The notes below the pieces were generated by a model. It searched no databases. It was not told the origin of the DNA and was given only the letters and a program-made list of their open reading frames with translations. The position numbers and the translations under genes are program-made. Positions 32,920 to 44,983 of a stretch of DNA of 64,000 nt are shown here, in pieces; within the stretch, counting starts at the first letter, position 1, and every line of letters starts with the position of its first letter. The DNA is from Podarcis filfolensis (Eukaryota): the NCBI GenBank assembly GCA_964270895.1, contig OZ185450.1; one strand, 5' to 3'.

Positions 32920-33420
32920 TGTGAATACATGCTCTGGCGGATTGAACAAACGAGACCAATAGTGGGTCCAATGGTAAAGAAGGCTGTTTCTGCATGTGCT
33001 GTAGAAGAAAGTGAGGGGCAGATGAGGCTTGTCAACCTGGGAAGGTAACCCATCTAGGAGAAGGAAAACTGATCCTAAACTTCTACTGTCTTGCACATCT
33101 TCAGAAGAAAAGGCTAAGGAATAAACCCTGCAGAAATCCAGAGTGGACTTCCTAACACGATTGAATGTTGCTTTGTATGCCTCCTTCTGGCAACTCCTGC
33201 CAAGTTGGTGCCAAAACATATTGCTCTGCTTTCCTTTGGACCACATCAGTGAAGCCGAGAGGTGGGGTTTGTCATCTGGGCAACCCAGGACCTCTGTTCG
33301 CACTGCCCTGGCTGCATCCCAGGGAGGTTACTTCGGTGCTGGTAACACAGCGGTTTGACCTCCAAAGGCACACTCCATCTGTCTGTCTCTTGAGTCAGAC
33401 AGATGTCAACAGCAACTACT
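32920..33420 (+). mobile_element. Probable RTE-related interspersed repeat
   Basis: Contains cccatctaggagaaggaaaact...taaac and ends in a caacagcaactact-type tail; recognised from memory only. Confidence 0.35.
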
Positions 33421-34088
33421 AATGGAATTCAATGGGATACTACAAAGAATGTAGTATTCCTTCTTCCCAATCTGGAAAATATTAGGATTGGATAGCATAT
33501 TAAAGATCTAGACAACTCTTGGCACAATCAAAACAAATTTTAGGTAGTCATGTTGGCCACTAGGAAAAATGAAAATGCAGTAGCAGCATCATACTTCCTG
33601 TGAGGACTAATAATCCTCACAGTTCACTGAAACTCTGAACTTGGGTTTGCTCCTTTTCAATCTTACTTTGGTCCTAATGTAAAGTTCTACTGTAGTGTTG
33701 CTTTTGGATTTTGGCAAATGCCACAGAGGCCCAAGTCTGTAATAAGAGACATAATTAGTAGTGTAGTCTGTATGCCTACACAGGAGTAAGCTCCATTGAG
33801 TTCGGTGGGACTTATTCTCAGGTACATAAAAGGATTGCAGTGTTTATCAGAAACCCTTTTTCTTCCAGATTTTGTACTACTACAAAGGAGTGGAGATAAA
33901 TGTTTTAACACTTAATTGTTCTAATTTTTATTTTTCTCCATCGCTATTCCTGTTATTGGCACACAACTTACAAGTTTACAGAAAAGATTTTCTCTCTCCC
34001 CCCCCCCCCCCGTACAGGACAGGGAGAAGCAGAATTTAATTTTTACACACACAAAAACAACATGTAAAGACTTGGTCTATATGCAAAT

Positions 34089-34384
34089 TTTATTATTCTG
34101 TTTCTAAAACCAATCCAAAGTTACTTAAAAAACGGAGGTCAACAGCACACAACATTAACTCCACCAAGGATTCAGGGCTCCCTGCATGTCAGGTCTGTGG
34201 TGGCTTGAAGACTCCTCCTTGCAGGGCTTCTCTTCTCTCACATCACTCCCAGGTTCATCTGCTTTCTGTCGCTCGGGGCCTTTCTTTGGGAGTATCTACC
34301 TTCTTGTGCTTCTCACTGTGGATTATTCTCTGTTCTTTCCTGTCCCTGTCTGTGGCTGTCTGGAGACCTAACTCTCGCATGCTC
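34089..34384 (-). pseudogene. RBMX2: Disabled 3' coding tail and 3'UTR of the RBMX2 retrocopy
   Basis: After the TAG (34387-34385) the frame continues EHARVRSPDSHRQGQERTENNPQ to a second in-frame stop TGA (34315-34313) in R/S/E-rich sequence. Minus-strand AATAAA at 34094-34089. Confidence 0.6.
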
Positions 34385-35074
34385 CTACTTAGACTCCCGT
34401 TCATGTTGTGCCCAGCTTGCATGTTTGTGCCCAGATGTGCTACTCCAGATCTGCTGACTCGCATTGGCATTCCATTCATACCTTGGGTCTTCCTTCTCCA
34501 CTTTGATCTTGGTTTTAGGAGGCGAGTCTGCAAGCTGTTCCTCTTTCACCCGTTTTTGGTGCTCTCTTTTCTCTTTCTTCTCCTTGCTTTTCTCTTTTTT
34601 GTGTTTCTTTACCACCACCTCACTGTCTTTGGGGGACTCTGGTGAACTTGGAGGTGTTTTAGCACCACATCCTCTTTCTCGGAGCGCTTTTGTCACATCA
34701 TCAATATCCTCGGAGTCTTTCGGTGGGCGGTAGTTAGCCACATGGTCCACACGAATTGTCCTTCCTTTAATCTTTATTCCATTAAAATTATCAACCACAA
34801 GAATGGTGCTTCTCTGATCTTCATAGCAAATGAAACAGAAGCCTTTGGATTTCCCTGTCTTCTTATCACGCACCAGATTTATGTTCACAATTTCCCCATA
34901 CTGTGAAAACACACAAACAATGTCGCCTTCCGTCAGCTCATAGGGAAGACCACCCACAAACACCCAAGCACTGTCACTGTACTCTGCATGCCAGGAGACC
35001 TTATCTTGTACACCAAGCTGTGCCTCACGCTCATTCAGCTCATTGATCAGCTTCACTTTGGTTAGTGGATTCAT
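34385..35074 (-). CDS. RBMX2: Intronless RBMX2 retrocopy ORF (229 aa; intact RRM, truncated tail)
   Basis: MNPLTKVKLINELNEREAQLGVQDKVSWHAEY...GGLPYELTEGDIVCVFSQYGEIVNINLVRDKKTGKSKGFCFICYEDQRSTILVVDNFNGIKIKGRTIRVDHV is unmistakably RBMX2 (Snu17/Ist3 family). It is continuous, without the introns of the vertebrate parent gene. Whether it is expressed is unknown. Confidence 0.9.
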   Translation of the reverse strand: MNPLTKVKLINELNEREAQLGVQDKVSWHAEYSDSAWVFVGGLPYELTEGDIVCVFSQYGEIVNINLVRDKKTGKSKGFCFICYEDQRSTILVVDNFNGIKIKGRTIRVDHVANYRPPKDSEDIDDVTKALRERGCGAKTPPSSPESPKDSEVVVKKHKKEKSKEKKEKREHQKRVKEEQLADSPPKTKIKVEKEDPRYEWNANASQQIWSSTSGHKHASWAQHERESK

Positions 35075-35350
35075 GCTGGTTCTCTTCGTCTATTGTGTGC
35101 AAAAAAAGAAAAAGAAAAGAAAAAATATTTTTAAAACACTCATAAAAATTTACTGACCTTTCAAAAGCCCCGTTAGGTAGCAAATGCATTTACACTTCTG
35201 TTATGGCAGCGGAGTGGCCATGTGTTCTAATTTACAGAAGGCAGCCTTCTCTTTTCTCTCTTTTATTATTACTTATTGCACACCCCTCAACCTAAGGTCC
35301 CTGGGTAGATTGCAACACAATACTGTATTAATATTAAAGCACAATATTTA

Positions 35351-35693
35351 GGATGCGGGTGGCGCTGTGGGTTAAACCACAGAGCCTAGGGCTTGCCGAT
35401 CAGAAGGTAAGCAGTTCGAATCCCCGTGACGGGGTGAGCTCCCATTGCTCCGTCCCTGCTCCTGCCAACCTAGCAGTTTGAAAGCACGTCAAAGTGCAAG
35501 TAGATAAATAGGTACCACTCCGGCGGGAACATAAACGTGCGCTGCTCTGGTTCACCAGAAGTGGCTTAGTCATGCTGGCCACATGACCCGGAAGCTGTAT
35601 GCCGGCTCCCTCGGCCAATAAAGCGAGATGAGCGCCACAACTCCAGAGTCGATCACGACTGGACCTAACGGTCAGGGGTCCCTTTACCTTTTT
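35351..35693 (+). mobile_element. Full-length Sauria SINE
   Basis: tRNA-like head ggtggcgctgtgggttaaacc...ggttcgaatccc, (CCTTTA) tail, 10-bp TSD ACAATATTTA. Confidence 0.9.
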
Positions 35694-35714
35694 ACAATAT
35701 TTAAAACAGATTGA

Positions 35715-35880
35715 AGTATCGGACTACAGCCTGGAAGGCCACAGTTCAAATCCTAGCTCAGCTAGGAAGCTCAACCTGAGTGGCTTTGGGCCAGTCCCTG
35801 CCTCTCGGCCTACCTCACAGGGTTGGTGTGTTGAGGTTAAAAATGAGGGCGCGGGAGGACCACGTACGCCACCCTTGAGT
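35715..35880 (+). mobile_element. MIR-like CORE-type SINE remnant
   Basis: gttcaaatcc...ttgggccagtc...cctacctcacaggg core; related copies at about 36610-36760, 51300-51520 (-) and 59355-59531. Confidence 0.6.
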
Positions 35881-36236
35881 ACATAAAATAAAAATATGCT
35901 CAGAGAGGCACTTTGGCCATGGCCTCGCTTTTAAAAGCAAGACAAAACTTCCTCTCCAGTCAGAGGTGGTGGTACTCTGCACGTGCTCAGAGGCACATCG
36001 CCCTCGGGGCGGGAAAGGAAGACCTCGGAGAAGAACGCGCGGTGTAGAACTGTTCCTTCGAAACCCGAATTCGGTCCTCCTGCAGCTTCTTCCCAGCGGC
36101 CATAACTTCAGCCCAGTCAGGAAGGCTGTGCCGCTACTGCGCGCGCGCGCGCACCGCCTCCTTTTCTCTCCTCCCCCCTCCCTCCCCGACCCACCCCGCT
36201 CTATCTCGCCCCTCCGCCTCCCGCTCTCACCTCAGG

Positions 36237-36246
36237 TCTCGCGAGA
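36237..36246. promoter_or_regulatory. Palindromic CGCG element TCTCGCGAGA (BANP/ZBTB33-type motif)
   Basis: Exact match TCTCGCGAGA ending 28 nt upstream of the ANKFY1 ATG. Confidence 0.75.
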
Positions 36247-36273
36247 GCTCCGAGGCAGCGGCCCAGGGCCAAC

Positions 36274-36283
36274 ATGGCGGAAG
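36274..36283 (+). CDS. ANKFY1: ANKFY1 (Rabankyrin-5) exon 1 coding part
   Basis: gccaacATGGCGGAAG|gtatgc, strong Kozak context; joins exon 2 to give MAEEEVAKLEKH. Confidence 0.9.
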
Positions 36284-36609
36284 GTATGCGCGATGCGGGC
36301 GGCGGCGGCGGCGGCGGCAATGCCAGCTGCACCTTGAGGAGCGGGAGGGTTTTTTCTCCCACCTCAGGCGGTTTTTCTGTGGGGCGGAGCGCTTAGCTAA
36401 CAGTGGTTTTGGTGCTGCTGGGTTGGTGCGGGGTGGGGGCAGATTGAAACCGGCTTGGAGGGCGGGGGGGGGAGTGTTTGGGCGTGCCTCGTTTATTTGT
36501 GTTAGTATTTTATTTAACTCTATTCCCTCCCGAGGAGATCGAGGCAGGATAGGTGGACCTTTTCCCCACCCCCGTCTTATATCCTCACAAGAGCCCTGGG
36601 AGGTAGGCG

Positions 36610-36760
36610 AGGCCATAGTGGTGCAGCGGTTAGAGAGAATGTGGACCAGGGCTTGGGAGAGACCTGGGTTCAAATCCTCCCCACCCCACGCCTCCAACTC
36701 GGCCAAGTGACCTTGGGGGCAGGTCACAGCCCCTCAGCCTGACCTACCTCGCAGGGTTTG
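36610..36760 (+). mobile_element. MIR-like CORE-type SINE in ANKFY1 intron 1
   Basis: gtggtgcagcggttagag...ctgggttcaaatcc...gtgaccttggg...cctacctcgcaggg. Confidence 0.65.
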
Positions 36761-37169
36761 TTTTATTGGCGCCGTAAAATTTATAGACCATTGATTTTAA
36801 AAGGCACGCAAACAAAAAAAAAAGCACGCAAACACACACACATCAAAGCAGTTTACAAAGGATGAAATACTAAAATATAGAAAAATTCACAACCCTGCCT
36901 TCAAAATACAAAAGTTAAGATAACTGAAGCAGATTAAAAGTATCTCGGCTTTCTGGGTAGACTTTTAGCAGGTGCCAAAAAAAAAGAGTACGGTGAAGGC
37001 GCCTGCTTGTTCTCAATAGGCAGGGAGTTCCAAGGTGCACTAAAGGATCAAGCTCTTACAAATACGGAACGGGTATTATGTGGCATCTGTAAGTACTGCT
37101 GATTCCGCTGATCAAAGCCATTGAGTGGGTGCACATCTGATAAAGTAAACTTGTGCCGAGTTGTTGAGG

Positions 37170-37390
37170 GCTTCATATGCCAATAGTAACACCTTGAACT
37201 TGGCTCAGTAGCAAATTGGCAACTAGTGCAGGGCTCTGAGCACAGGTGTTATGGGTTGACGATGCCTTGCTGCTGTCAGCAATCATGCTGCAGCATTCTG
37301 CATGAACTGCAACTTCCAGATCAGGAGCACATTGCAGTAATCCAGTCTTGAAGTAATCGATGCATAAACTACTGTGGCAAGGCAAGGGTT
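37170..37390 (-). mobile_element. L2-clade LINE ORF2 fragment
   Basis: Minus-strand translation ATVVYASITSRLDYCN...KLQFMQNAAA is the typical L2 RT C-terminal motif. Confidence 0.8.
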
Positions 37391-40300
37391 GTGAGGAGGT
37401 CGCCTGGGAGTGAGTGTTACTTGGCCCTGGGTGGGGTGTTGTATGTATGCAGTGGGGCGTGAGAGAGACTTTTCCAACAACTCTTTCTGCTTGGTGAGTT
37501 AAGTAGAAGCTTATGTGTGGAAGTAGAGGAAGACTATCTTCCTAGAAAGGAGGTGTTTCTTTGAAATGGGGGAGTCATAGTGGCATCACTCCACCCCTGT
37601 ATGCATGCACCCACCCACCCACTTAGGAACATAAAGAGTCTGCCCTATACAATGTCACTTTCTACACTGACTGGTGGTAATGGTGTGTCCATTTGTCTAT
37701 CCTATCTCCTGGCATCTAGTGCTTTTAATTGAACCTAGGACCTTCTACATGAAAAAGTGTAGTTGGCCCCACTGAGTTACATGTGGGTAAATCCATACCA
37801 TAGATTTAAACTGCATTCAGCAAACACTTAAAGCACACAACCTCCGCCCTCCAAATAATCATGGGAACTGTAGTTTACCCCTCACAGATATACCATTCCT
37901 TATCAAACTATAGTTCCCAGGATTCTTTGTGGAAATATATGTGCTTTAAATGTGCTCTGGGTGTGTTTTTAATGTATGGTGCAGATCTGCCAGTCTCTCC
38001 CTCTAGTTGCCTACCAGTAGCAGCTTTCTAAGAGTCCAGTGGAAAATGCCATGGATTGAACCTGGCACCTTCTGCATTCAAATTCTGTGCGTATGACCCT
38101 TCCCATATCTCAGCTGCTTAGAACTCAGCTTGTTGCCTCGATTGTTAGTACTGTATCCCCTAAACAACTTCAATTAAGGCATACATTGTTTCCTGCACAC
38201 CCACAACAGCACAGCGGCTTTAAGACACTTTAGTAACTCTTCTGAACTTTTTGTAAAGGATTACAAAAATCACCTCCATATTATTTTGTGTATTCATGTT
38301 GCTTTTCTGTAACGTGTCTCTGCCCCAGGGAGAGTGCAGTCATTGTTATTATTTATACAGTACCCTCAGTGTGTATGGCCCTTCACAGAGAAGGCTGCCC
38401 AAGAACTGAAGTGGTGCTAGATCCCACCCAAAGCTGGGATCTACTTAGTAATAGTAGTCATGGCCCATGGGGTCCTTGGTGTGCATGCTATTTTACAGAG
38501 GCAAAACAAGGCAAGGGAAGGTTCTTGCTGGAAGAGATTCGTTCTGTTATGCATAACGCAGTCCGTGTGCTTGGTGCTTTATAGAATTACAGCAAGACAA
38601 CAGGTCTCTGCCTGAAACAGCTTACAATGTAAAAGTCTAGAGGTGGTGTGGAGGATGGAGGCAGAGGGGGAGGCAGGCTGAAGCCAAGGTTAACAGTGGG
38701 GAGGAATGTGCACTAGGTTTACTTGTATCTATGTGGGCTTCATTTCACTAGGAGATAAGAACTAAGGAACTTTGTGAAAGCATCCATAAAAAGTTAGCCT
38801 TTGGTGAGGGATATGAACAAAAGCAATTAAAAGCAAAGGGAAGTTTATTCAGTTGTTTCTTTTGCAGAGGATAGGAAGATGAGGGATCCTAGAATTGTAG
38901 AGTTGCACAGGCCCACAAGGGTCATCTAGTCCAACCCCCCCCCCCCCATGCAGGAATATTTTTGCTGAACTTGTGGCTCAAACCCACAACCCATCTCATG
39001 GATGTTTCCTTGAGCATTGGGGTTATGTGTGTGGTAGGGAGGGCCCTTGAATGTACTTGTTCCTGGAAAAATATAGCAGAAAATGTATGTAAGGGTTTGT
39101 ATTTCTTTTCCTTGAAGGAGCTTGGGGTGGCATACATACTTATCCCTTCTCACCTCTTATTTTCCTCCCTGCAAATCTCTGAAACAGGTTAGGTTGAGAA
39201 ACAGTGGCAGGTTCAAGTTCGTCTGGTTAATTTCATGGCTGATGTGGGATTTTGACCCAGCTCTTTCCATTTGTGGAAGGTTTCAGTGACATCAGTGAGT
39301 CTTCATTGGTAGTAAATGCACTTAGAATAGGGTGTTGAGTTGCATGAAGCAACCTAGGTTGCAGTGCTAAACAAATCCAGCCCAATGTACTATTTTGTAA
39401 ATATGTTTAAGACTACAGCTCATGTCATATTTTCATGGGGTCCTGTTTAAGGCAGATTTACAGACATGAAGTCCAATTTAGTTCAGTGGGGCTTCTCCCT
39501 AGTTAGTGTGTGCAGGATTGTGGCATTAGATTTAGAAAGGACTAGCTGCCAAGTAAGTGACCATAAGATTGCACCCATACCTAAATGCTAGTCTCACCTC
39601 AATGAATGAATGACCATTTCTTTAGGATCGAGCTGTTCAGTTGCATATCCAAGAACATGGTTTACTATCTTATTAACTATCTTAGTTTGGATGTGATGCT
39701 GAGCCAAGGAATGTGGTGTGTTTCTTCTGTGCTCTTGCGAAATGCAAATAGTTTCTGATTTACTGTGACATGCAAACAAAGTCACAGATTGCATATCCGT
39801 TTAGTAAATTTTTATTTGCTTTCCATATAGTCATTTCACTTTCCTGGGATGTTCAGAGATGACTTGGATTTTTTAAACAGTACTGAAAATTGTGCAACAC
39901 CTACATGTGATGATCTGGCAGATTTCACTGACTTCCTCTCACAGCCAGAGATCTGTCCACGCAGTTTCATTTCTCAGAAAGTTTTCTTGGGAGAATAAGA
40001 AGAACCCAGGTCTTCATAATGAAGAGACCTGCTTTTAAGGTTTCTTTCCCCTCAAATTTCTGAAGTGTTTGTCTTTGGTTGGTTTGCCCTCTGTGCCCTG
40101 GGTGAGCAAATGGTAGTAGATAAATAATCACAACAAAGTGTGGGTGGGCAAGTTTTTCCAAAGTAAATAGGACTTGGCTTAATGGTAAAAAGCTGTTGAG
40201 GCACTGTTGTGCAACAGTTTGGACTGCTGCCCACTTAAAGAAGTTACTTAGTTTATTGAGTAAATTGTTTGAATATGAATAACTGTGCACATGAAGGAGC

Positions 40301-40653
40301 AGTTCTGAAGAAAAACATATACTTCCCTGTTTTTAGATAATAGATATGTTACAGCAGTTAAGAGACATTCCCACTTGTGTTTGAGAAGAGATAAGTCCTC
40401 TAGTAAAAACACTAGCCATTTGCACCAGCTATATTCAAAATAAGGCTTCAGTTCTTTAGTTGATTGAGCCATTAAAACATGCTTTTTAAGTTAAAAAGGG
40501 GTTGTTTTAACATTCCATCCTCAGTCTGTGTCACTGAAGAACTGTATGTGTCATCTTTGAATATCAACCAGGCTGGAAAAATCCCATCTGGACATCTAGA
40601 GATCTCTTGCAAAAGTCTTCAAATAGAAGGAGATAAACTTTAGCATTGCCCTA

Positions 40654-40990
40654 AATGTGGGTGGCGCTGTGGGTTAAATGACAGAACCTAGGGCTTGCCG
40701 ATCAGAAGGTTGACGGTTTGAAACCCCGCAACGGGGTGAGCTCCCGTTTCTCGGTCCCTGCTCCTGCCAACCTAGCAGTTCAAAAGCACGAAGTGCAAGT
40801 AGATAAATAGGTACTGCTCCGGCGGGAAGGTAAACGGCGTTTCCGTGTGCTGCTCTGGTTTGCCAGAAGCGGCTTAGTCATGCTGGCCACATGACCCGGA
40901 AGCTGTACGCTGGCTCCCTCGGCCAGTAAAGCGAGATGAGCACCGCAACCCTGGACCTAATGGTCAGGGGTCCCTTTACCTTTACCTTTA
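40654..40990 (+). mobile_element. Sauria SINE
   Basis: Highly similar to 35351-35693 with a small internal deletion; three tail repeats. Confidence 0.9.
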
Positions 40991-41384
40991 ATAGTTGCAG
41001 TCAAGCTAATGGTATAGACCAGCCTTCTCCAACTTGGTAGCTACCAATCCCTGACCATTGGCCATACTGGATGGGCAGATGGAAGCTGGAGTCCAAGAAC
41101 ATCTACAGCTCTACAGTTTCCCCAACCCTTGCTTTAACAAATGGTTTATCTGCTGGCCAGCTAAGTAGTTGGTTTCTACAAGAAGCAACCACAACCTGCT
41201 CTGAATATATCTAGAGATGCTGAATGCTCTGCTGCAGATGAAAGCATTCCATGCAATGCCTAACTATGCATTATTCAGTGAAAGTTCCCTGATCAATACT
41301 GGTATCCTTCACTGCCTTAAAGTGATGGTGTGTGATTTTCTTGTAAAGCTTTTGGCTTTCTTAACCATGAAAGGTAAATTCTAT

Positions 41385-41515
41385 ATAGAATCATAGAATT
41401 GTAGAGTTGGAAGGGACCCTGAGAATCAACCCCCCTGCAACGCAGAAATATGCAGCTGTCCCATGTAGGGATCAAACCTGCAATCTTGGCATTATCAGCA
41501 TCACACTCAGAATAA
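41385..41515 (-). mobile_element. tRNA-headed SINE with CR1-derived tail
   Basis: catagaattgtagagttggaagggacc...ccccctgcaacgcag...gggatcaaacctgc; related copies at about 38899-39000 (-), 46876-46982 (+) and 56202-56270 (-). Confidence 0.6.
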
Positions 41516-42899
41516 CCGGATAATATAGTGGCAGTATTTAGATTGCAAGACTTCATTCTCCTTTTTTCAGTCCAAACTGAAGGACTCCTGGGAAGAGTTG
41601 CGGTTGAGTTTGCTTGGCTCATTTTGTTTGTTACAATTATTCATATTCTGCCTTTCAAGGTTGCTGAGAATTAAGATTGAACTTCATTAAAACATGCACA
41701 CACAATAAACAGCATGAAACTAAATGATTTGATTGTGGCCAAGTGCAGTAGTTAATATGGAAGGCAGCTGTTCCAGGATGCTTAAGGACCATGCATGGAG
41801 TCACTACTCACCAGTATTTATTGAATAGGGAATCCCTGCCCGTGTGCATCCTTTGTAGAGTTCCTTTTACTGTTAAACATACCTTGCTGGAGCCTGCACA
41901 GGATCCTGAGGTCTAAGGAGACATCATGTAGGGGCTGGTCAAACCAGAACAGGGTGCAGGGATTGCCTCTTGATGACCCTGGGGAGTGGGTGCAGAGTTC
42001 AGAGTGGCATACTGGCAGGCTATACCACTGGAACACCCCCTTCCTGCCCAGTATCCAACTCCTCATTGATAACCGACTATTGAAGCATCTCCTTTCACTC
42101 ATGGCCCTGACGCAGTCTGTTCCAAACCACTGGGCCCCTTCCCAGGGTCGTTTGCAGGCAGCTCCTCCAGCTGTGCCCCCCCCCCCCGTCCAACCAGCCC
42201 CTCCACGATGGCTCTTTGGGACTCATGACACACAGTTCTCAACTGCTCAGCAAGCCTTTCTTGCACACCCGGTCCCCTGCTCCAGGTATAACCTCAATTC
42301 TGGTGTAACTTTTAAAATTGCAGTTGCCTTTAAAATATTGGTAACCTCCTTCCTAAGAATAAATGCTTGGTACGGAATAAGTATACTACCAGAGTCTTGG
42401 ACTAGATTTGTAAGGATCGTGTTAGATGATTCAGAATTTCTTTGTTAACGTACACCTACTTTGCGATGTCAGTTCTTTATATCTACAACCAGTGTAAAAT
42501 GTGAATGGTGATCTTAGCCAAGCCTTGATGCATTTGCTAGCAGCGTATCAAAGCACAGTTAATGCCACATATCTGGCTTTTTAGCAAATCTTGCTGGCTG
42601 GTACTTAATGGAAACAATTAGTCATTCTTGGTGGATTTGACAGCATAAAGATCAATGAAGAAAGCCTCTTTAATGTCATCAGATGCAGTGTATTGATACA
42701 ATAACTTAGCATACACCTCCCCCACTATGAGGGTTGTTGAAGTGCAGCCTATAGCCTCAGACTTCCTTTATCATTGCTCATTTTGAAGGGTATCAAGTAT
42801 AAAAGCCAGGACGTTCCTTAGGCCTCCTACCTGAGATCCCCAGAGATGCCACGGAAACTGTTTGGGTCTCTTTAGGGACAAATTGTGATGGCAGCATGA

Positions 42900-43345
42900 C
42901 TGAGCTGTATGAAGTTATGGGTGGCATAGAGAAAGTGGACAGAGAGAGGTTCTGTTCTCCCTCTGTCTCCCATAATACTAGATCCCAGGCTCATCCAATG
43001 AACTGAACACTGGAAGAATCAAGATAGACAAAAGGAGGTGTGTCTTTTCACTGCACATGGTTGCACTATGGAATTCGCTCCCGCAAGGCATGGCTGCCAA
43101 CTCAGATGGCTTTAAAATGGTGTTAAGTCAAATTTATGGGGAGGATTAATACTATCAGTGGCTGCTAGTCATGGTGGTTATATATTGCCTCCAGTATCAT
43201 TGTTCATATACCTCTGAATACCAGTTGTTAGGGCTCATTACTGGGAGACTGCTGTTCCACACATCTCCTGCTTGTGACTGTGAGAATGTAATGCTGGATC
43301 GGATGCATCGCTGGTCTGAGCCAGCAGGTTCTTGGAGCAGCCTTC
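42900..43345 (+). mobile_element. CR1 LINE 3' fragment
   Basis: Decayed EKVDRE...RTRGH...DKRK...LWNSLP-type C-terminal coding sequence followed by 3'UTR. Confidence 0.65.
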
Positions 43346-44983
43346 CCTATCCTTGAGTCCCCAAATGATGTTGGACCGCATTTCCCATAATCCTTAACCA
43401 TTGGCCATGCTGACTGAGGATGATGCATGCTGTGGTCCAGAAACATCTAAGGACTCAAATTTGGGGGATTTTGTATGCAGAGTGTGTACTCTACCATTTA
43501 GCTGCGGCTAGTTTTTTTTTTTTTTAATCCTTTCGCTCTTAACTTACCTGAGGTCCCAACAAGCCAGAGTTCCAGTACTTCCAAAAGGTATTCCAAAAGT
43601 TTTGACTTGAGCAAGTCTCTGACATGTCAAAGTATGTCTTAAGAGCGGAGCTCTTAAAATTGATTTTAGTCCGATTAGGGATTAGGATTGGTCACTTCAG
43701 GGAATGCATTTCTGGGATTTTTTAGAATCTGAAAGACTGACACCAACAAAAATGTGCCTATTTTTTGCTGTGCTGGCCTTGTTCCTTTTCACCGGGGGTG
43801 GGTGGAGGTGGAGATTTGTATTGCCAGCACAAGGTGGGAAGGAATCTTCACACCAGGCAGGAGTATCGTTGGCATACTGTAGTTCTTTCTGAAGTTTCTG
43901 CTTTTGGAAATGTATTTATTTGTGGGAGCAGCAGGTGGATCTTCTGCTGATGCTTTAGTGCTCAAGTGCTCTGTGATGTTTAGCAGCGTGTTTACTGTAG
44001 AACTCTGCATCTTCAGAAATCCTTGCGTGTCATTGTCCTCACCTTTTATCTCAAGGCTTGTACACGCAAAACCTTTTTTTAAATAGTCCAGCATCTTTTT
44101 AAAATTGGGTGCCGCAGAGAGAATGTACTGATGAACAATCATACAGTGGAATGACTAATGGTGCAATCGTGTGCATTCTCAGAAAGCTCCTCTGTGTTTG
44201 ATGGAATCAAAATGAATGTTTGTCACAAACTAATTCCCCACAGAACTGCATGCAAAGGGACAAACTTGAGGGCATCTCCTAGTTTGGTTATTCCTGGCAT
44301 AGACCATCCAGTGTGATACCCTCCAGTTGTTGTTGGACTACAATTCTCATCATTCCTGACCATTTGCTGTGCTGGCTGGGGCTCATGGGAGTTGGAGTCC
44401 ACAACTTCTAGAAGGCACTGCATTGGCTATGCTGGCTCTGTGCCTTTGAAGCTGTATTGTACTGAGCCAGACAATTGGTCCATCTAGGCCAATACTGTCT
44501 GCTTGGACTGCCAGGGGTCTTCCCAGGCCTGGTACATGAGGCAGAGATAGATAGGACCCTAGATCCTTTTGGTTGCAAAGCACGTGCTACACTACTCAGC
44601 TGTTTATACAAATAAAGTGTTTCTATCCCACTCTTTAGCTTACAAAAAACACACACCAGTAGTTCCTTCCCTTCAGACTCAATATCTAAGAGACGTGACA
44701 CGATTGAAAAAGGATGAGGAGGGATGAGTAAAGAGGCAGGGAGGCAAACTCAGACACCAGTCTTACAGATCTTATAACAGTCAGCTGGGACTGAAGCAGT
44801 TCATGAAGCCTGTTGGAATGACTGCCGCTGTGTGAGTTGAGGGAGAGCCAAAGGCAGCTCTTCTCTTCGTAGAGAAGATGGAAAAGGCTCGCTTCCCTCC
44901 TCTCCCTGTGCTCTGCAGCCTGGTGCAGAGGTGCCAGTCGGCTTTTGCTCCACGTTTTGAATTTTGTTCCGTTGTCTTTGCAG

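What the first reader, a model, noticed from the sequence alone, without database searches (positions are those of the whole stretch)
34089..35089. RBMX2 retrocopy with preserved RRM but stop-interrupted tail: candidate functional retrogene
Seen: 229 uninterrupted codons, the first 135 or so being very close to vertebrate RBMX2. Both visible stops (34387 and 34315) fall in the low-complexity tail and could be single-base changes (TAY to TAG, CGA to TGA). No clean poly(A) tail or TSD remains. Established: RBMX2 is the Snu17/Ist3 subunit of the RES splicing complex, and the yeast protein is little more than the RRM region. Inference: decayed insertion hallmarks plus an intact RRM fit selection for a shortened RES subunit, though a few unusual substitutions (EYS, ILVV) could signal early decay.
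Basis: partly seen in the sequence, partly recalled or inferred. Interest (0 to 1): 0.75.

Follow-up and report, generated by a model that had tools for sequence, protein, structure and literature searches.

The report
Truncated RBMX2 retrogene kept in lizards
An intronless, shortened copy of the splicing-factor gene RBMX2 has sat between ANKFY1 and UBE2G1 since before wall lizards and the common lizard diverged, and selection still protects its RNA-binding half, so it is most likely a working gene; whether it is transcribed could not be tested here.

Summary
Window 34385-35074 (-) is a 229-codon ORF, collinear with RBMX2 and lacking all five parental introns.

The same copy, with the same TAG at codon 230 and the same 2-nt deletion further on, sits in the ANKFY1|copy|UBE2G1 slot in Podarcis muralis, P. 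raffonei, P. lilfordi and Zootoca vivipara. There it is already annotated as "RBMX2-like" or "RBMX2".

- **Codons 1-135 (RRM core):** my codon branch model gives omega 0.17 on the branches linking the five orthologous copies (p 1.6e-4 against neutrality; parents 0.024). Synonymous change runs at about the flank rate.
- **Codons 136-229 (tail):** omega 1.35, which is neutral.
- **Indels:** no frameshifts in the ORF, against 7.6 expected.

It is therefore a conserved retrogene whose effective product is a yeast-Snu17-sized RRM protein.

The intron-containing parent lies on a ~51-Mb chromosome that matches published Podarcis Z lengths. The lacertid Z is homologous to the mammalian X. An "out-of-Z" origin is therefore likely, but I did not test it directly.

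Expression is not shown. Eighteen small, possibly RNA runs hold copy-specific words.

The scan had not noted this gene on other DNA.

The parts
34058..35100 (-). Stretch derived from the parental RBMX2 mRNA (5'UTR remnant, CDS, ex-CDS, 3'UTR). The T-rich 35101-35125 may also be parental 5'UTR.
   Evidence: Alignment to parental mRNA reconstructed from L005/L006; no intron at any of the 5 parental intron positions.
34385..35074 (-). ORF of 229 codons plus TAG stop
   Evidence: Same length in P. muralis, P. raffonei and P. lilfordi; 226 codons in Zootoca through a 12-nt deletion and a 3-nt insertion, both in frame.
34670..35074 (-). Codons 1-135: N-terminal segment, RRM and C-terminal extension. 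This is the part under purifying selection.
   Evidence: Omega 0.17 among the five orthologous copies, p 1.6e-4 against 1. 6-7 nonsynonymous against 11 synonymous changes. Least-diverged 500 nt of the intergenic region. No indels.
34751..34963 (-). RRM_1 domain (residues 38-108), RNP2 and RNP1 intact
   Evidence: Pfam PF00076 at E 1.9e-21; alignment.
34388..34669 (-). Codons 136-229: Lys/Glu/Ser-rich tail, evolving neutrally
   Evidence: Omega 1.35, not different from 1; parents 0.12, p 1e-7. All 7 differences between two P. muralis assemblies fall in residues 153-216.
34385..34387 (-). TAG stop replacing parental TAT (Tyr230); shared by all five species
34357..34358 (-). Site of a 2-nt deletion relative to the parent (frameshift), shared by all five species. 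It creates the apparent TGA at 34313-34315.
   Evidence: the ORF at 34255-34533 carries the parental frame.
34243..34245 (-). Relic of the parental TGA stop
   Evidence: alignment.
34089..34094 (-). AATAAA polyadenylation signal inherited from the parent, conserved in all five species
34916..34918 (-). Codon 53 GTT (Val), private to this window; Ile in parents and P. muralis, Leu in the other copies
34796..34798 (-). Codon 93 GTG (Val), private to this window; Ala in all other copies, in the parents, in human and in yeast
36000..36400 (.). CpG island (GC 0.66-0.68, CpG o/e 0.92-0.99) at the ANKFY1 start, divergent from the copy and about 1 kb from its ATG. Candidate shared promoter.
   Evidence: ANKFY1 is head-to-head with the copy in all species.
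35023..35059 (.). Not sent to any search tool afterwards.

Best explanation
This is a processed copy of the RBMX2 mRNA. It was inserted between ANKFY1 and UBE2G1 on the lacertid lineage, before Podarcis and Zootoca split. Early on it acquired a stop at codon 230 and a frameshift. It has since been kept as a protein-coding retrogene. The selected product is the first ~135 residues: the RRM with its N- and C-terminal extensions, which matches the whole of yeast Snu17/Ist3. The remaining 94 codons drift. Inferred, not shown: it is transcribed divergently from, or near, the ANKFY1 CpG-island promoter; it uses the inherited AATAAA; and its protein acts as a minimal RES-complex subunit that can stand in for, or compete with, the full-length parent. 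The parent is probably Z-linked.
For: No introns where the parent has five, plus parental UTRs. The copies are orthologous, in the same slot, with the same stop and the same 2-nt deletion in 5 genomes. The copies and the lacertid parents form separate clades (bootstrap 92 and 88), with about 10 fixed synonymous differences. Ongoing gene conversion is therefore unlikely. Omega for codons 1-135 is 0.17 against 1 (p 1.6e-4). It stays below 1 under an alternative topology (p 9e-5) and in two separate subsets of branches. Counts are 6-7 nonsynonymous to 11 synonymous, binomial p 1-2e-3. The neutral-scaled length of the tree linking the five copies in the RRM (about 0.13 per nt) is close to the flank tree length of 0.107, so the constraint is on the protein, not on the DNA. 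There are 0 frameshifting indels against 7.6 expected (p 5e-4), while the 320 nt after the stop carry 4 indels. Two P. muralis assemblies differ at 7 residues, all beyond residue 152. Natural orthologues of 139-158 aa exist in Hymenoptera and Drosophila, and yeast IST3 is 148 aa. Small runs hold 0.27-0.42 of the copy's 31-mers. That is what a full orthologous copy would give (0.31-0.37), not the parental mRNA (0.06-0.15).
Against: No direct evidence of transcription or translation. The runs are only guessed to be RNA, the reads tool could not be used, and two protein-fragment searches found no lacertid transcript-derived fragments. Constraint is about 7 times weaker than on the parent (0.17 against 0.024, p 0.002). 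This window's copy has two private replacements in the RRM, one at an Ala that is invariant from yeast to human. The branch model is my own implementation on 5+5 sequences and rests on about 18 substitutions.
Confidence: 0.72

Rival explanations
1. It was a working retrogene for most of its history but is now relaxed or dying in this particular species.
For: Two private replacements in the RRM of this window's copy, I/L53V and A93V, against one or two private synonymous changes. Omega in the Podarcis branches (0.21) is higher than on the Zootoca side (0.11).
Against: Both replacements are conservative. The ORF, the start codon, the RNP motifs and AATAAA are intact. Two changes cannot be told apart from the clade-wide omega of about 0.2.
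Confidence: 0.12
2. It is a neutrally decaying processed pseudogene whose ORF survives by chance.
For: Stop and frameshift in the tail, no poly(A) or TSD, a neutral tail, and no proven transcript.
Against: Omega 0.17 with p 1.6e-4. Neutral expectations are about 74 substitutions with P(no stop) of 0.047, and 7.6 frameshifting indels with P(0) of 5e-4. The RRM part is a conservation island inside intergenic DNA that diverges 3-9%.
Confidence: 0.05
3. The conservation reflects a non-coding role, such as an ANKFY1 promoter-proximal element or a lncRNA, or gene conversion from the parent, and not a protein.
For: The copy lies about 1 kb from the ANKFY1 CpG island. A block of about 65 nt just upstream (35130-35195) is also conserved.
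Against: Synonymous sites change at the flank rate while replacement sites are depressed. The copy and parent clades are reciprocally monophyletic, with fixed synonymous differences. Parental exons are split by introns into pieces of 52-178 nt.
Confidence: 0.03
4. The protein is made but does not act as a normal RES subunit. It might be a tail-less competitor of the parent, or an RRM protein with a new partner or tissue role.
For: The parental tail is itself constrained (omega 0.12). The copy has lost 50 residues of it and lets the rest drift. Its RRM constraint is relaxed relative to the parent.
Against: Nothing tested here separates this from the main reading. Short orthologues function without any tail in yeast and insects.
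Confidence: 0.15

Closest known systems
Database models of the same gene: 'RBMX2-like' XP_028564780 (P. muralis), XP_053223207 / CAI5794972 (P. raffonei / P. lilfordi), 'RBMX2' XP_034996098 (Zootoca vivipara)
   Same: Orthologous position, the same stop, 226-229 aa, 93% identical to the window's protein.
   Different: This window's exact protein is not in the collection. I found no paper that describes these models as a retrogene, tests selection on them or places their parent.
Parental vertebrate RBMX2 (human RES subunit, PDB 5z56 chain Y; lacertid parent 279 aa, 6 coding exons)
   Same: Collinear through residue ~199; RRM, RNP motifs and flanking extensions are kept; 97.8% identical to the lacertid parent over 1-135.
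   Different: No introns, a different chromosome, the last 50 residues lost, the remaining tail neutral, and RRM constraint about 7 times weaker.
Yeast Snu17/Ist3 (148 aa) and short insect RBMX2 orthologues (139-158 aa)
   Same: The selected part of the copy (1-135) matches essentially the whole of these proteins (query 10-132 against IST3 4-126).
   Different: Those are the sole, intron-bearing or ancestral genes of their genomes. This is a secondary, truncated duplicate beside a full-length parent.
Mammalian out-of-X retrogenes (Potrzebowski et al. 2008, PMC2276528)
   Same: An autosomal intronless copy of a gene whose parent lies on the differentiated sex chromosome. The lacertid Z shares gene content with the therian X (PMC6534595).
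   Different: This is a ZW system, where no excess traffic off the Z was found in birds or Lepidoptera (PMC3242482). Germline expression is untested and the product is truncated.

Membership tests
Processed retrocopy / retrogene | Lacks the parent's introns and carries parental UTR sequence | tested here: met
   The parent has 6 coding exons (L005, L006, L009). The copy is continuous across all 5 junctions, with a 5'UTR remnant and a 3'UTR with AATAAA.
Processed retrocopy / retrogene | Poly(A) tail and target-site duplications | tested here: not met
   No A-run after the signal. The only flanking repeat (35231-35260 against 33975-33998) lies 130 and 60 nt away from the ends of homology, and the intervening DNA does not match the parent locus. 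This is expected for an old insertion.
Processed retrocopy / retrogene | Lies at a different locus from the parent | tested here: met
   Copy on 44.6-46.8 Mb records between ANKFY1 and UBE2G1; parent on 47.4-51.5 Mb records next to a Rab33-type gene.
Functional retrogene | Orthologues retained with an open frame across species | tested here: met
   Five genomes, 226-229 codons, only in-frame indels.
Functional retrogene | dN/dS significantly below 1 after the duplication | tested here: met
   Codons 1-135: 0.17, p 1.6e-4. Whole ORF: 0.52, p 0.029. The tail alone is not below 1.
Functional retrogene | Transcribed (and translated) | tested here: inconclusive
No transcript-derived protein fragments were found.
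RBMX2 / Snu17 (Ist3) RES-complex subunit | Single RRM with RNP1/RNP2 and the family's N- and C-terminal extensions | tested here: met
RBMX2 / Snu17 (Ist3) RES-complex subunit | Vertebrate-type charged C-terminal tail under constraint | tested here: not met
   Truncated at 229 of 279 residues. The remaining tail has omega 1.35 against 0.12 in the parents.
RBMX2 / Snu17 (Ist3) RES-complex subunit | Binds BUD13 and SNIP1/Pml1 and joins the activated spliceosome | not testable with these tools
   Needs biochemistry.
Out-of-sex-chromosome retrogene | Parent on the differentiated sex chromosome | tested here: inconclusive
   Parent records are 51.49 Mb (P. raffonei), 51.10 (P. lilfordi), 51.02 (P. 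muralis) and 47.44 (L. agilis). Published Z lengths are 51.4 Mb for P. cretensis, 'almost the same' in P. raffonei (PMC12860763), and 50.7 Mb for P. lilfordi (PMC10214862). The P. raffonei accession is out of size order. The lacertid Z carries orthologues of human-X genes, including mbnl3 and klhl13 (PMC6534595). I saw no record title or coverage ratio.

The most novel reading that the evidence does not exclude
This is an 'out-of-Z' retrogene. The parent sits on the lacertid Z, which is homologous to the mammalian X. The autosomal RRM-only copy is kept because it supplies RES function where the Z copy is hemizygous or silenced, for example in ZW females or in meiotic cells. That would be a ZW mirror of mammalian out-of-X traffic. 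It may be one of several, since the scan also noted an intronless NXT2-derived gene in this genome.
Probability: 0.2. Interest if true: 0.75.

Novelty: new member of a known kind. Interest (0 to 1): 0.5.

Why it matters
Retrogenes that survive for tens of millions of years are rare, and few have been characterised in reptiles. This one is unusual in three ways. First, it is a core spliceosome component. Second, it was truncated early and yet kept, so it shows in nature which part of vertebrate RBMX2 is indispensable, namely the yeast-sized RRM core. Third, its parent probably lies on a Z chromosome that shares gene content with the mammalian X. This gives a concrete test case for whether gene export from sex chromosomes also happens in ZW vertebrates, where studies of birds found none. 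For annotation, it argues against calling this locus a pseudogene in Podarcis genomes, and against calling it the RBMX2 orthologue in Zootoca.

Tried and rejected
1. **Reads.** I asked to lay four runs on window 33000-38000. The later searches used only window 34388-34669 and 34670-35020. The look-up of the P. muralis parent and the comparison of two P. muralis proteins used database ids, not window letters.

2. **Tail search.** No hits in the 52-164 aa range.

3. **RRM search, codons 19-135.** No lacertid fragments, so no transcript contig could be fetched.

4. **Rhineura outgroup protein.** Not on record. I used a cordylid gene and an unnamed Logan transcript as outgroups instead.

5. **TSD search.** There is a two-part repeat at 35231-35260 and 33975-33998. 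It is not adjacent to the ends of homology, and the DNA in between does not match the parent locus. I treat it as unproven.

6. **Upstream DNA as parental 5'UTR.** A 10/12 match is the only similarity to the parent's upstream DNA. I rejected it as chance.

7. **Gene conversion and non-coding constraint.** Both considered and rejected; see the rival explanations.

8. **The near-identity of the P. raffonei and P. lilfordi ORFs (2/687).** I first took it for extra constraint. It fits better with the mosaic genealogies seen all along this locus.

Full report
**What is there.** On the minus strand, 34385-35074 is an ORF of 229 codons ending in TAG. Pfam finds one RRM_1 domain at residues 38-108 (E 1.9e-21). 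Against solved structures, the best match is human RBMX2 (5z56 chain Y, E 5e-94), collinear over residues 1-199. Next comes yeast IST3/Snu17, with query 10-132 aligned to 4-126 of 148.

**It is a processed copy.** I fetched the intron-containing RBMX2 genes of Lacerta agilis, Podarcis muralis and P. raffonei (279 aa) and rebuilt their coding sequences exactly. Each has six coding exons, and the first holds only ATGAA. The window sequence runs without a break across all five junctions.
- It begins with about 25 nt of the parental 5'UTR, plus a T-rich stretch that is also parental.
- It continues through about 190 nt of parental 3'UTR with AATAAA at 34089-34094.
- There is no poly(A) run.
- The only flanking direct repeat is not next to the ends of homology.

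**The tail.** Relative to the parent, the copy has TAT to TAG at codon 230. About 10 codons later it has a 2-nt deletion at about 34357/34358. The parental frame continues in the ORF at 34255-34533 listed, up to the relic of the parental stop at 34243-34245.

**It is old and shared.** The word search found a 229-aa 'RBMX2-like' protein of P. muralis at 93% identity. Its 90% cluster also holds P. raffonei/P. lilfordi (229 aa) and Zootoca vivipara (226 aa). In the three Podarcis genomes the gene lies between ANKFY1, head-to-head, and UBE2G1. In Zootoca only ANKFY1 was listed within the fetched locus. The five sequences align throughout. All share the TAG and the 2-nt deletion, so both lesions predate the Podarcis-Zootoca split. 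Cleaned flanking DNA places the window species 2.5-3% from each of the three Podarcis and 5.7% from Zootoca. It is therefore a fourth Podarcis. A tree of the ORF puts the five copies (bootstrap 92) as sister to the Lacerta+Podarcis parents (88), far inside the long branch to the outgroups. The copy was therefore made on the lacertid lineage, before the Lacerta-Podarcis split.

**Selection.** A sliding comparison shows that 34595-35094 is the least-diverged 500 nt of the intergenic region: 0.2-2.5%, against 3-9% around it. I listed every variable codon. Among the five copies, codons 1-135 carry 6-7 replacement and 11 synonymous changes, where about 73% replacements are expected (binomial p 1-2e-3).

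I wrote a GY94/F3x4 branch model, with the parents as background and the stem as its own class:

| Partition or branches | Omega | Test against 1 | Parents (background) | Test against parents |
|---|---|---|---|---|
| Codons 1-135, branches linking the five copies | 0.17 | p 1.6e-4 | 0.024 | p 0.002 |
| Codons 136-229, same branches | 1.35 | p 0.47 | 0.12 | p 1e-7 |
| Codons 1-135, alternative topology | 0.15 | p 9e-5 | | |
| Codons 1-135, Podarcis branches only | 0.21 | p 0.009 | | |
| Codons 1-135, Zootoca side only | 0.11 | p 0.007 | | |

The neutral-scaled length of the tree linking the five copies in the RRM part is about 0.13 per nt, and the flank tree length is 0.107. Synonymous sites are therefore not constrained, which argues against a non-coding role. 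About ten fixed synonymous differences between all copies and all lacertid parents argue against gene conversion.

Indels occur at 0.0147 per nt in the flank. That predicts 10.1 in the ORF, of which 7.6 would shift the frame. The ORF has two, of 12 and 3 nt, both in Zootoca. The 320 nt after the stop have four, of 5, 4, 3 and 5 nt. Two P. muralis assemblies differ at seven residues, all beyond residue 152.

**What it probably does.** The selected part equals the whole of yeast Snu17. Hymenopteran and Drosophila orthologues are only 139-158 aa long. I therefore infer a minimal RES-type RRM protein. Its promoter is not established. The nearest candidate is the ANKFY1 CpG island at 36000-36400, which is divergent and about 1 kb away. 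The pyrimidine tract and AG just before the ATG, which another note read as a 3' splice site, descend largely from the parental 5'UTR. This neither proves nor excludes their use as an acceptor.

**Expression.** Not shown. One run search listed 18 small runs (39-148 million letters, 'RNA?' by guess) of three related organisms. They hold 0.27-0.42 of the sampled words. I computed locally what different sources would give:
- full orthologous copies: 0.31-0.56
- parental mRNAs: only 0.06-0.15

So these runs hold copy-derived sequence, but their RNA status is unproven. I worked beside those places afterwards.

**Parent and sex chromosome.** The parent lies on records of 51.49, 51.10, 51.02 and 47.44 Mb (P. 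raffonei, P. lilfordi, P. muralis, L. agilis). A Rab33-type GTPase gene lies 7.5 kb upstream. Published Z chromosomes are 51.4 Mb in P. cretensis, 'almost the same' in P. raffonei (PMC12860763), and 50.7 Mb in P. lilfordi (PMC10214862). The lacertid Z carries orthologues of human-X and chicken-4p genes, including mbnl3, klhl13, lpar4 and gab3, and arose 85-150 Mya (PMC6534595). From memory, human RBMX2 and RAB33A lie at Xq26.1, near MBNL3. Z-linkage of the parent is therefore likely, about 0.8, but it was not tested directly.

**Novelty.** The gene models exist in public annotation. I found no paper on an RBMX2 retrogene in any reptile, or on gene export from a squamate Z. It is a new, well-supported member of a known kind.

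Noticed in passing
window 24400-45000 against L001-L004: The genealogy changes along the locus. The window species is about 1% from P. raffonei across 39500-44500 but 2.5-5% elsewhere, and other pairs show their own low-divergence tracts. The P. raffonei and P. lilfordi ORFs differ at only 2 of 687 nt, while the DNA on both sides differs by 3-4%. This fits the mosaic, introgressed genomes reported for Podarcis.
   Followed up: partly
window 35130-35195: A block of about 65 nt just upstream of the copy is almost invariant in all five species (about 2 variable sites where about 7 are expected). It does not match the parent locus. It could be a promoter, 5'UTR or intron element of the retrogene.
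   Followed up: partly
window 35231-35260 and 33975-33998: A two-part direct repeat (a GA-rich 9-mer and a second 9-mer, collinear) brackets the copy at 130 nt and 60 nt from the ends of homology. It may be a degraded TSD of a larger insertion, or chance.
   Followed up: partly
L005/L006/L009 (lacertid parents) against L007/L008: The lacertid parental RBMX2 is itself shortened (279 aa against 293-300 in the outgroups). The DNA after its TGA still reads like the ancestral C-terminus.
   Followed up: partly
P0122 / L002 (Zootoca vivipara): NCBI names the Zootoca copy 'RBMX2', not '-like', and no Zootoca protein sits in the parental 90% cluster. The intron-containing parent may be unannotated or missing there.
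   Followed up: no
P0124 (UniProt A0A670JJK7, P. muralis, 255 aa): A second public model of the same locus skips the stop and frameshift region with an intron, and ends in the ancestral C-terminal reading. I did not test whether RNA supports that intron.
   Followed up: no
one search hit list: Several mammals carry annotated, shortened 'RBMX2-like' proteins: opossum 171 aa, aardvark 174, hare 195 and 201, fruit bat 178, pika 193. Repeated retrocopying of this X-linked gene may be common.
   Followed up: no
another piece of this genome (scan note s1-287802): The scan noted an intact intronless NXT2-derived gene. NXT2 is X-linked in human, so this may be a second copy exported from the lacertid Z. 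I did not check it.
   Followed up: no
window 34003-34016: A run of 14 G on the gene's strand, downstream of the copy. It varies in length and sequence among the five species.
   Followed up: no
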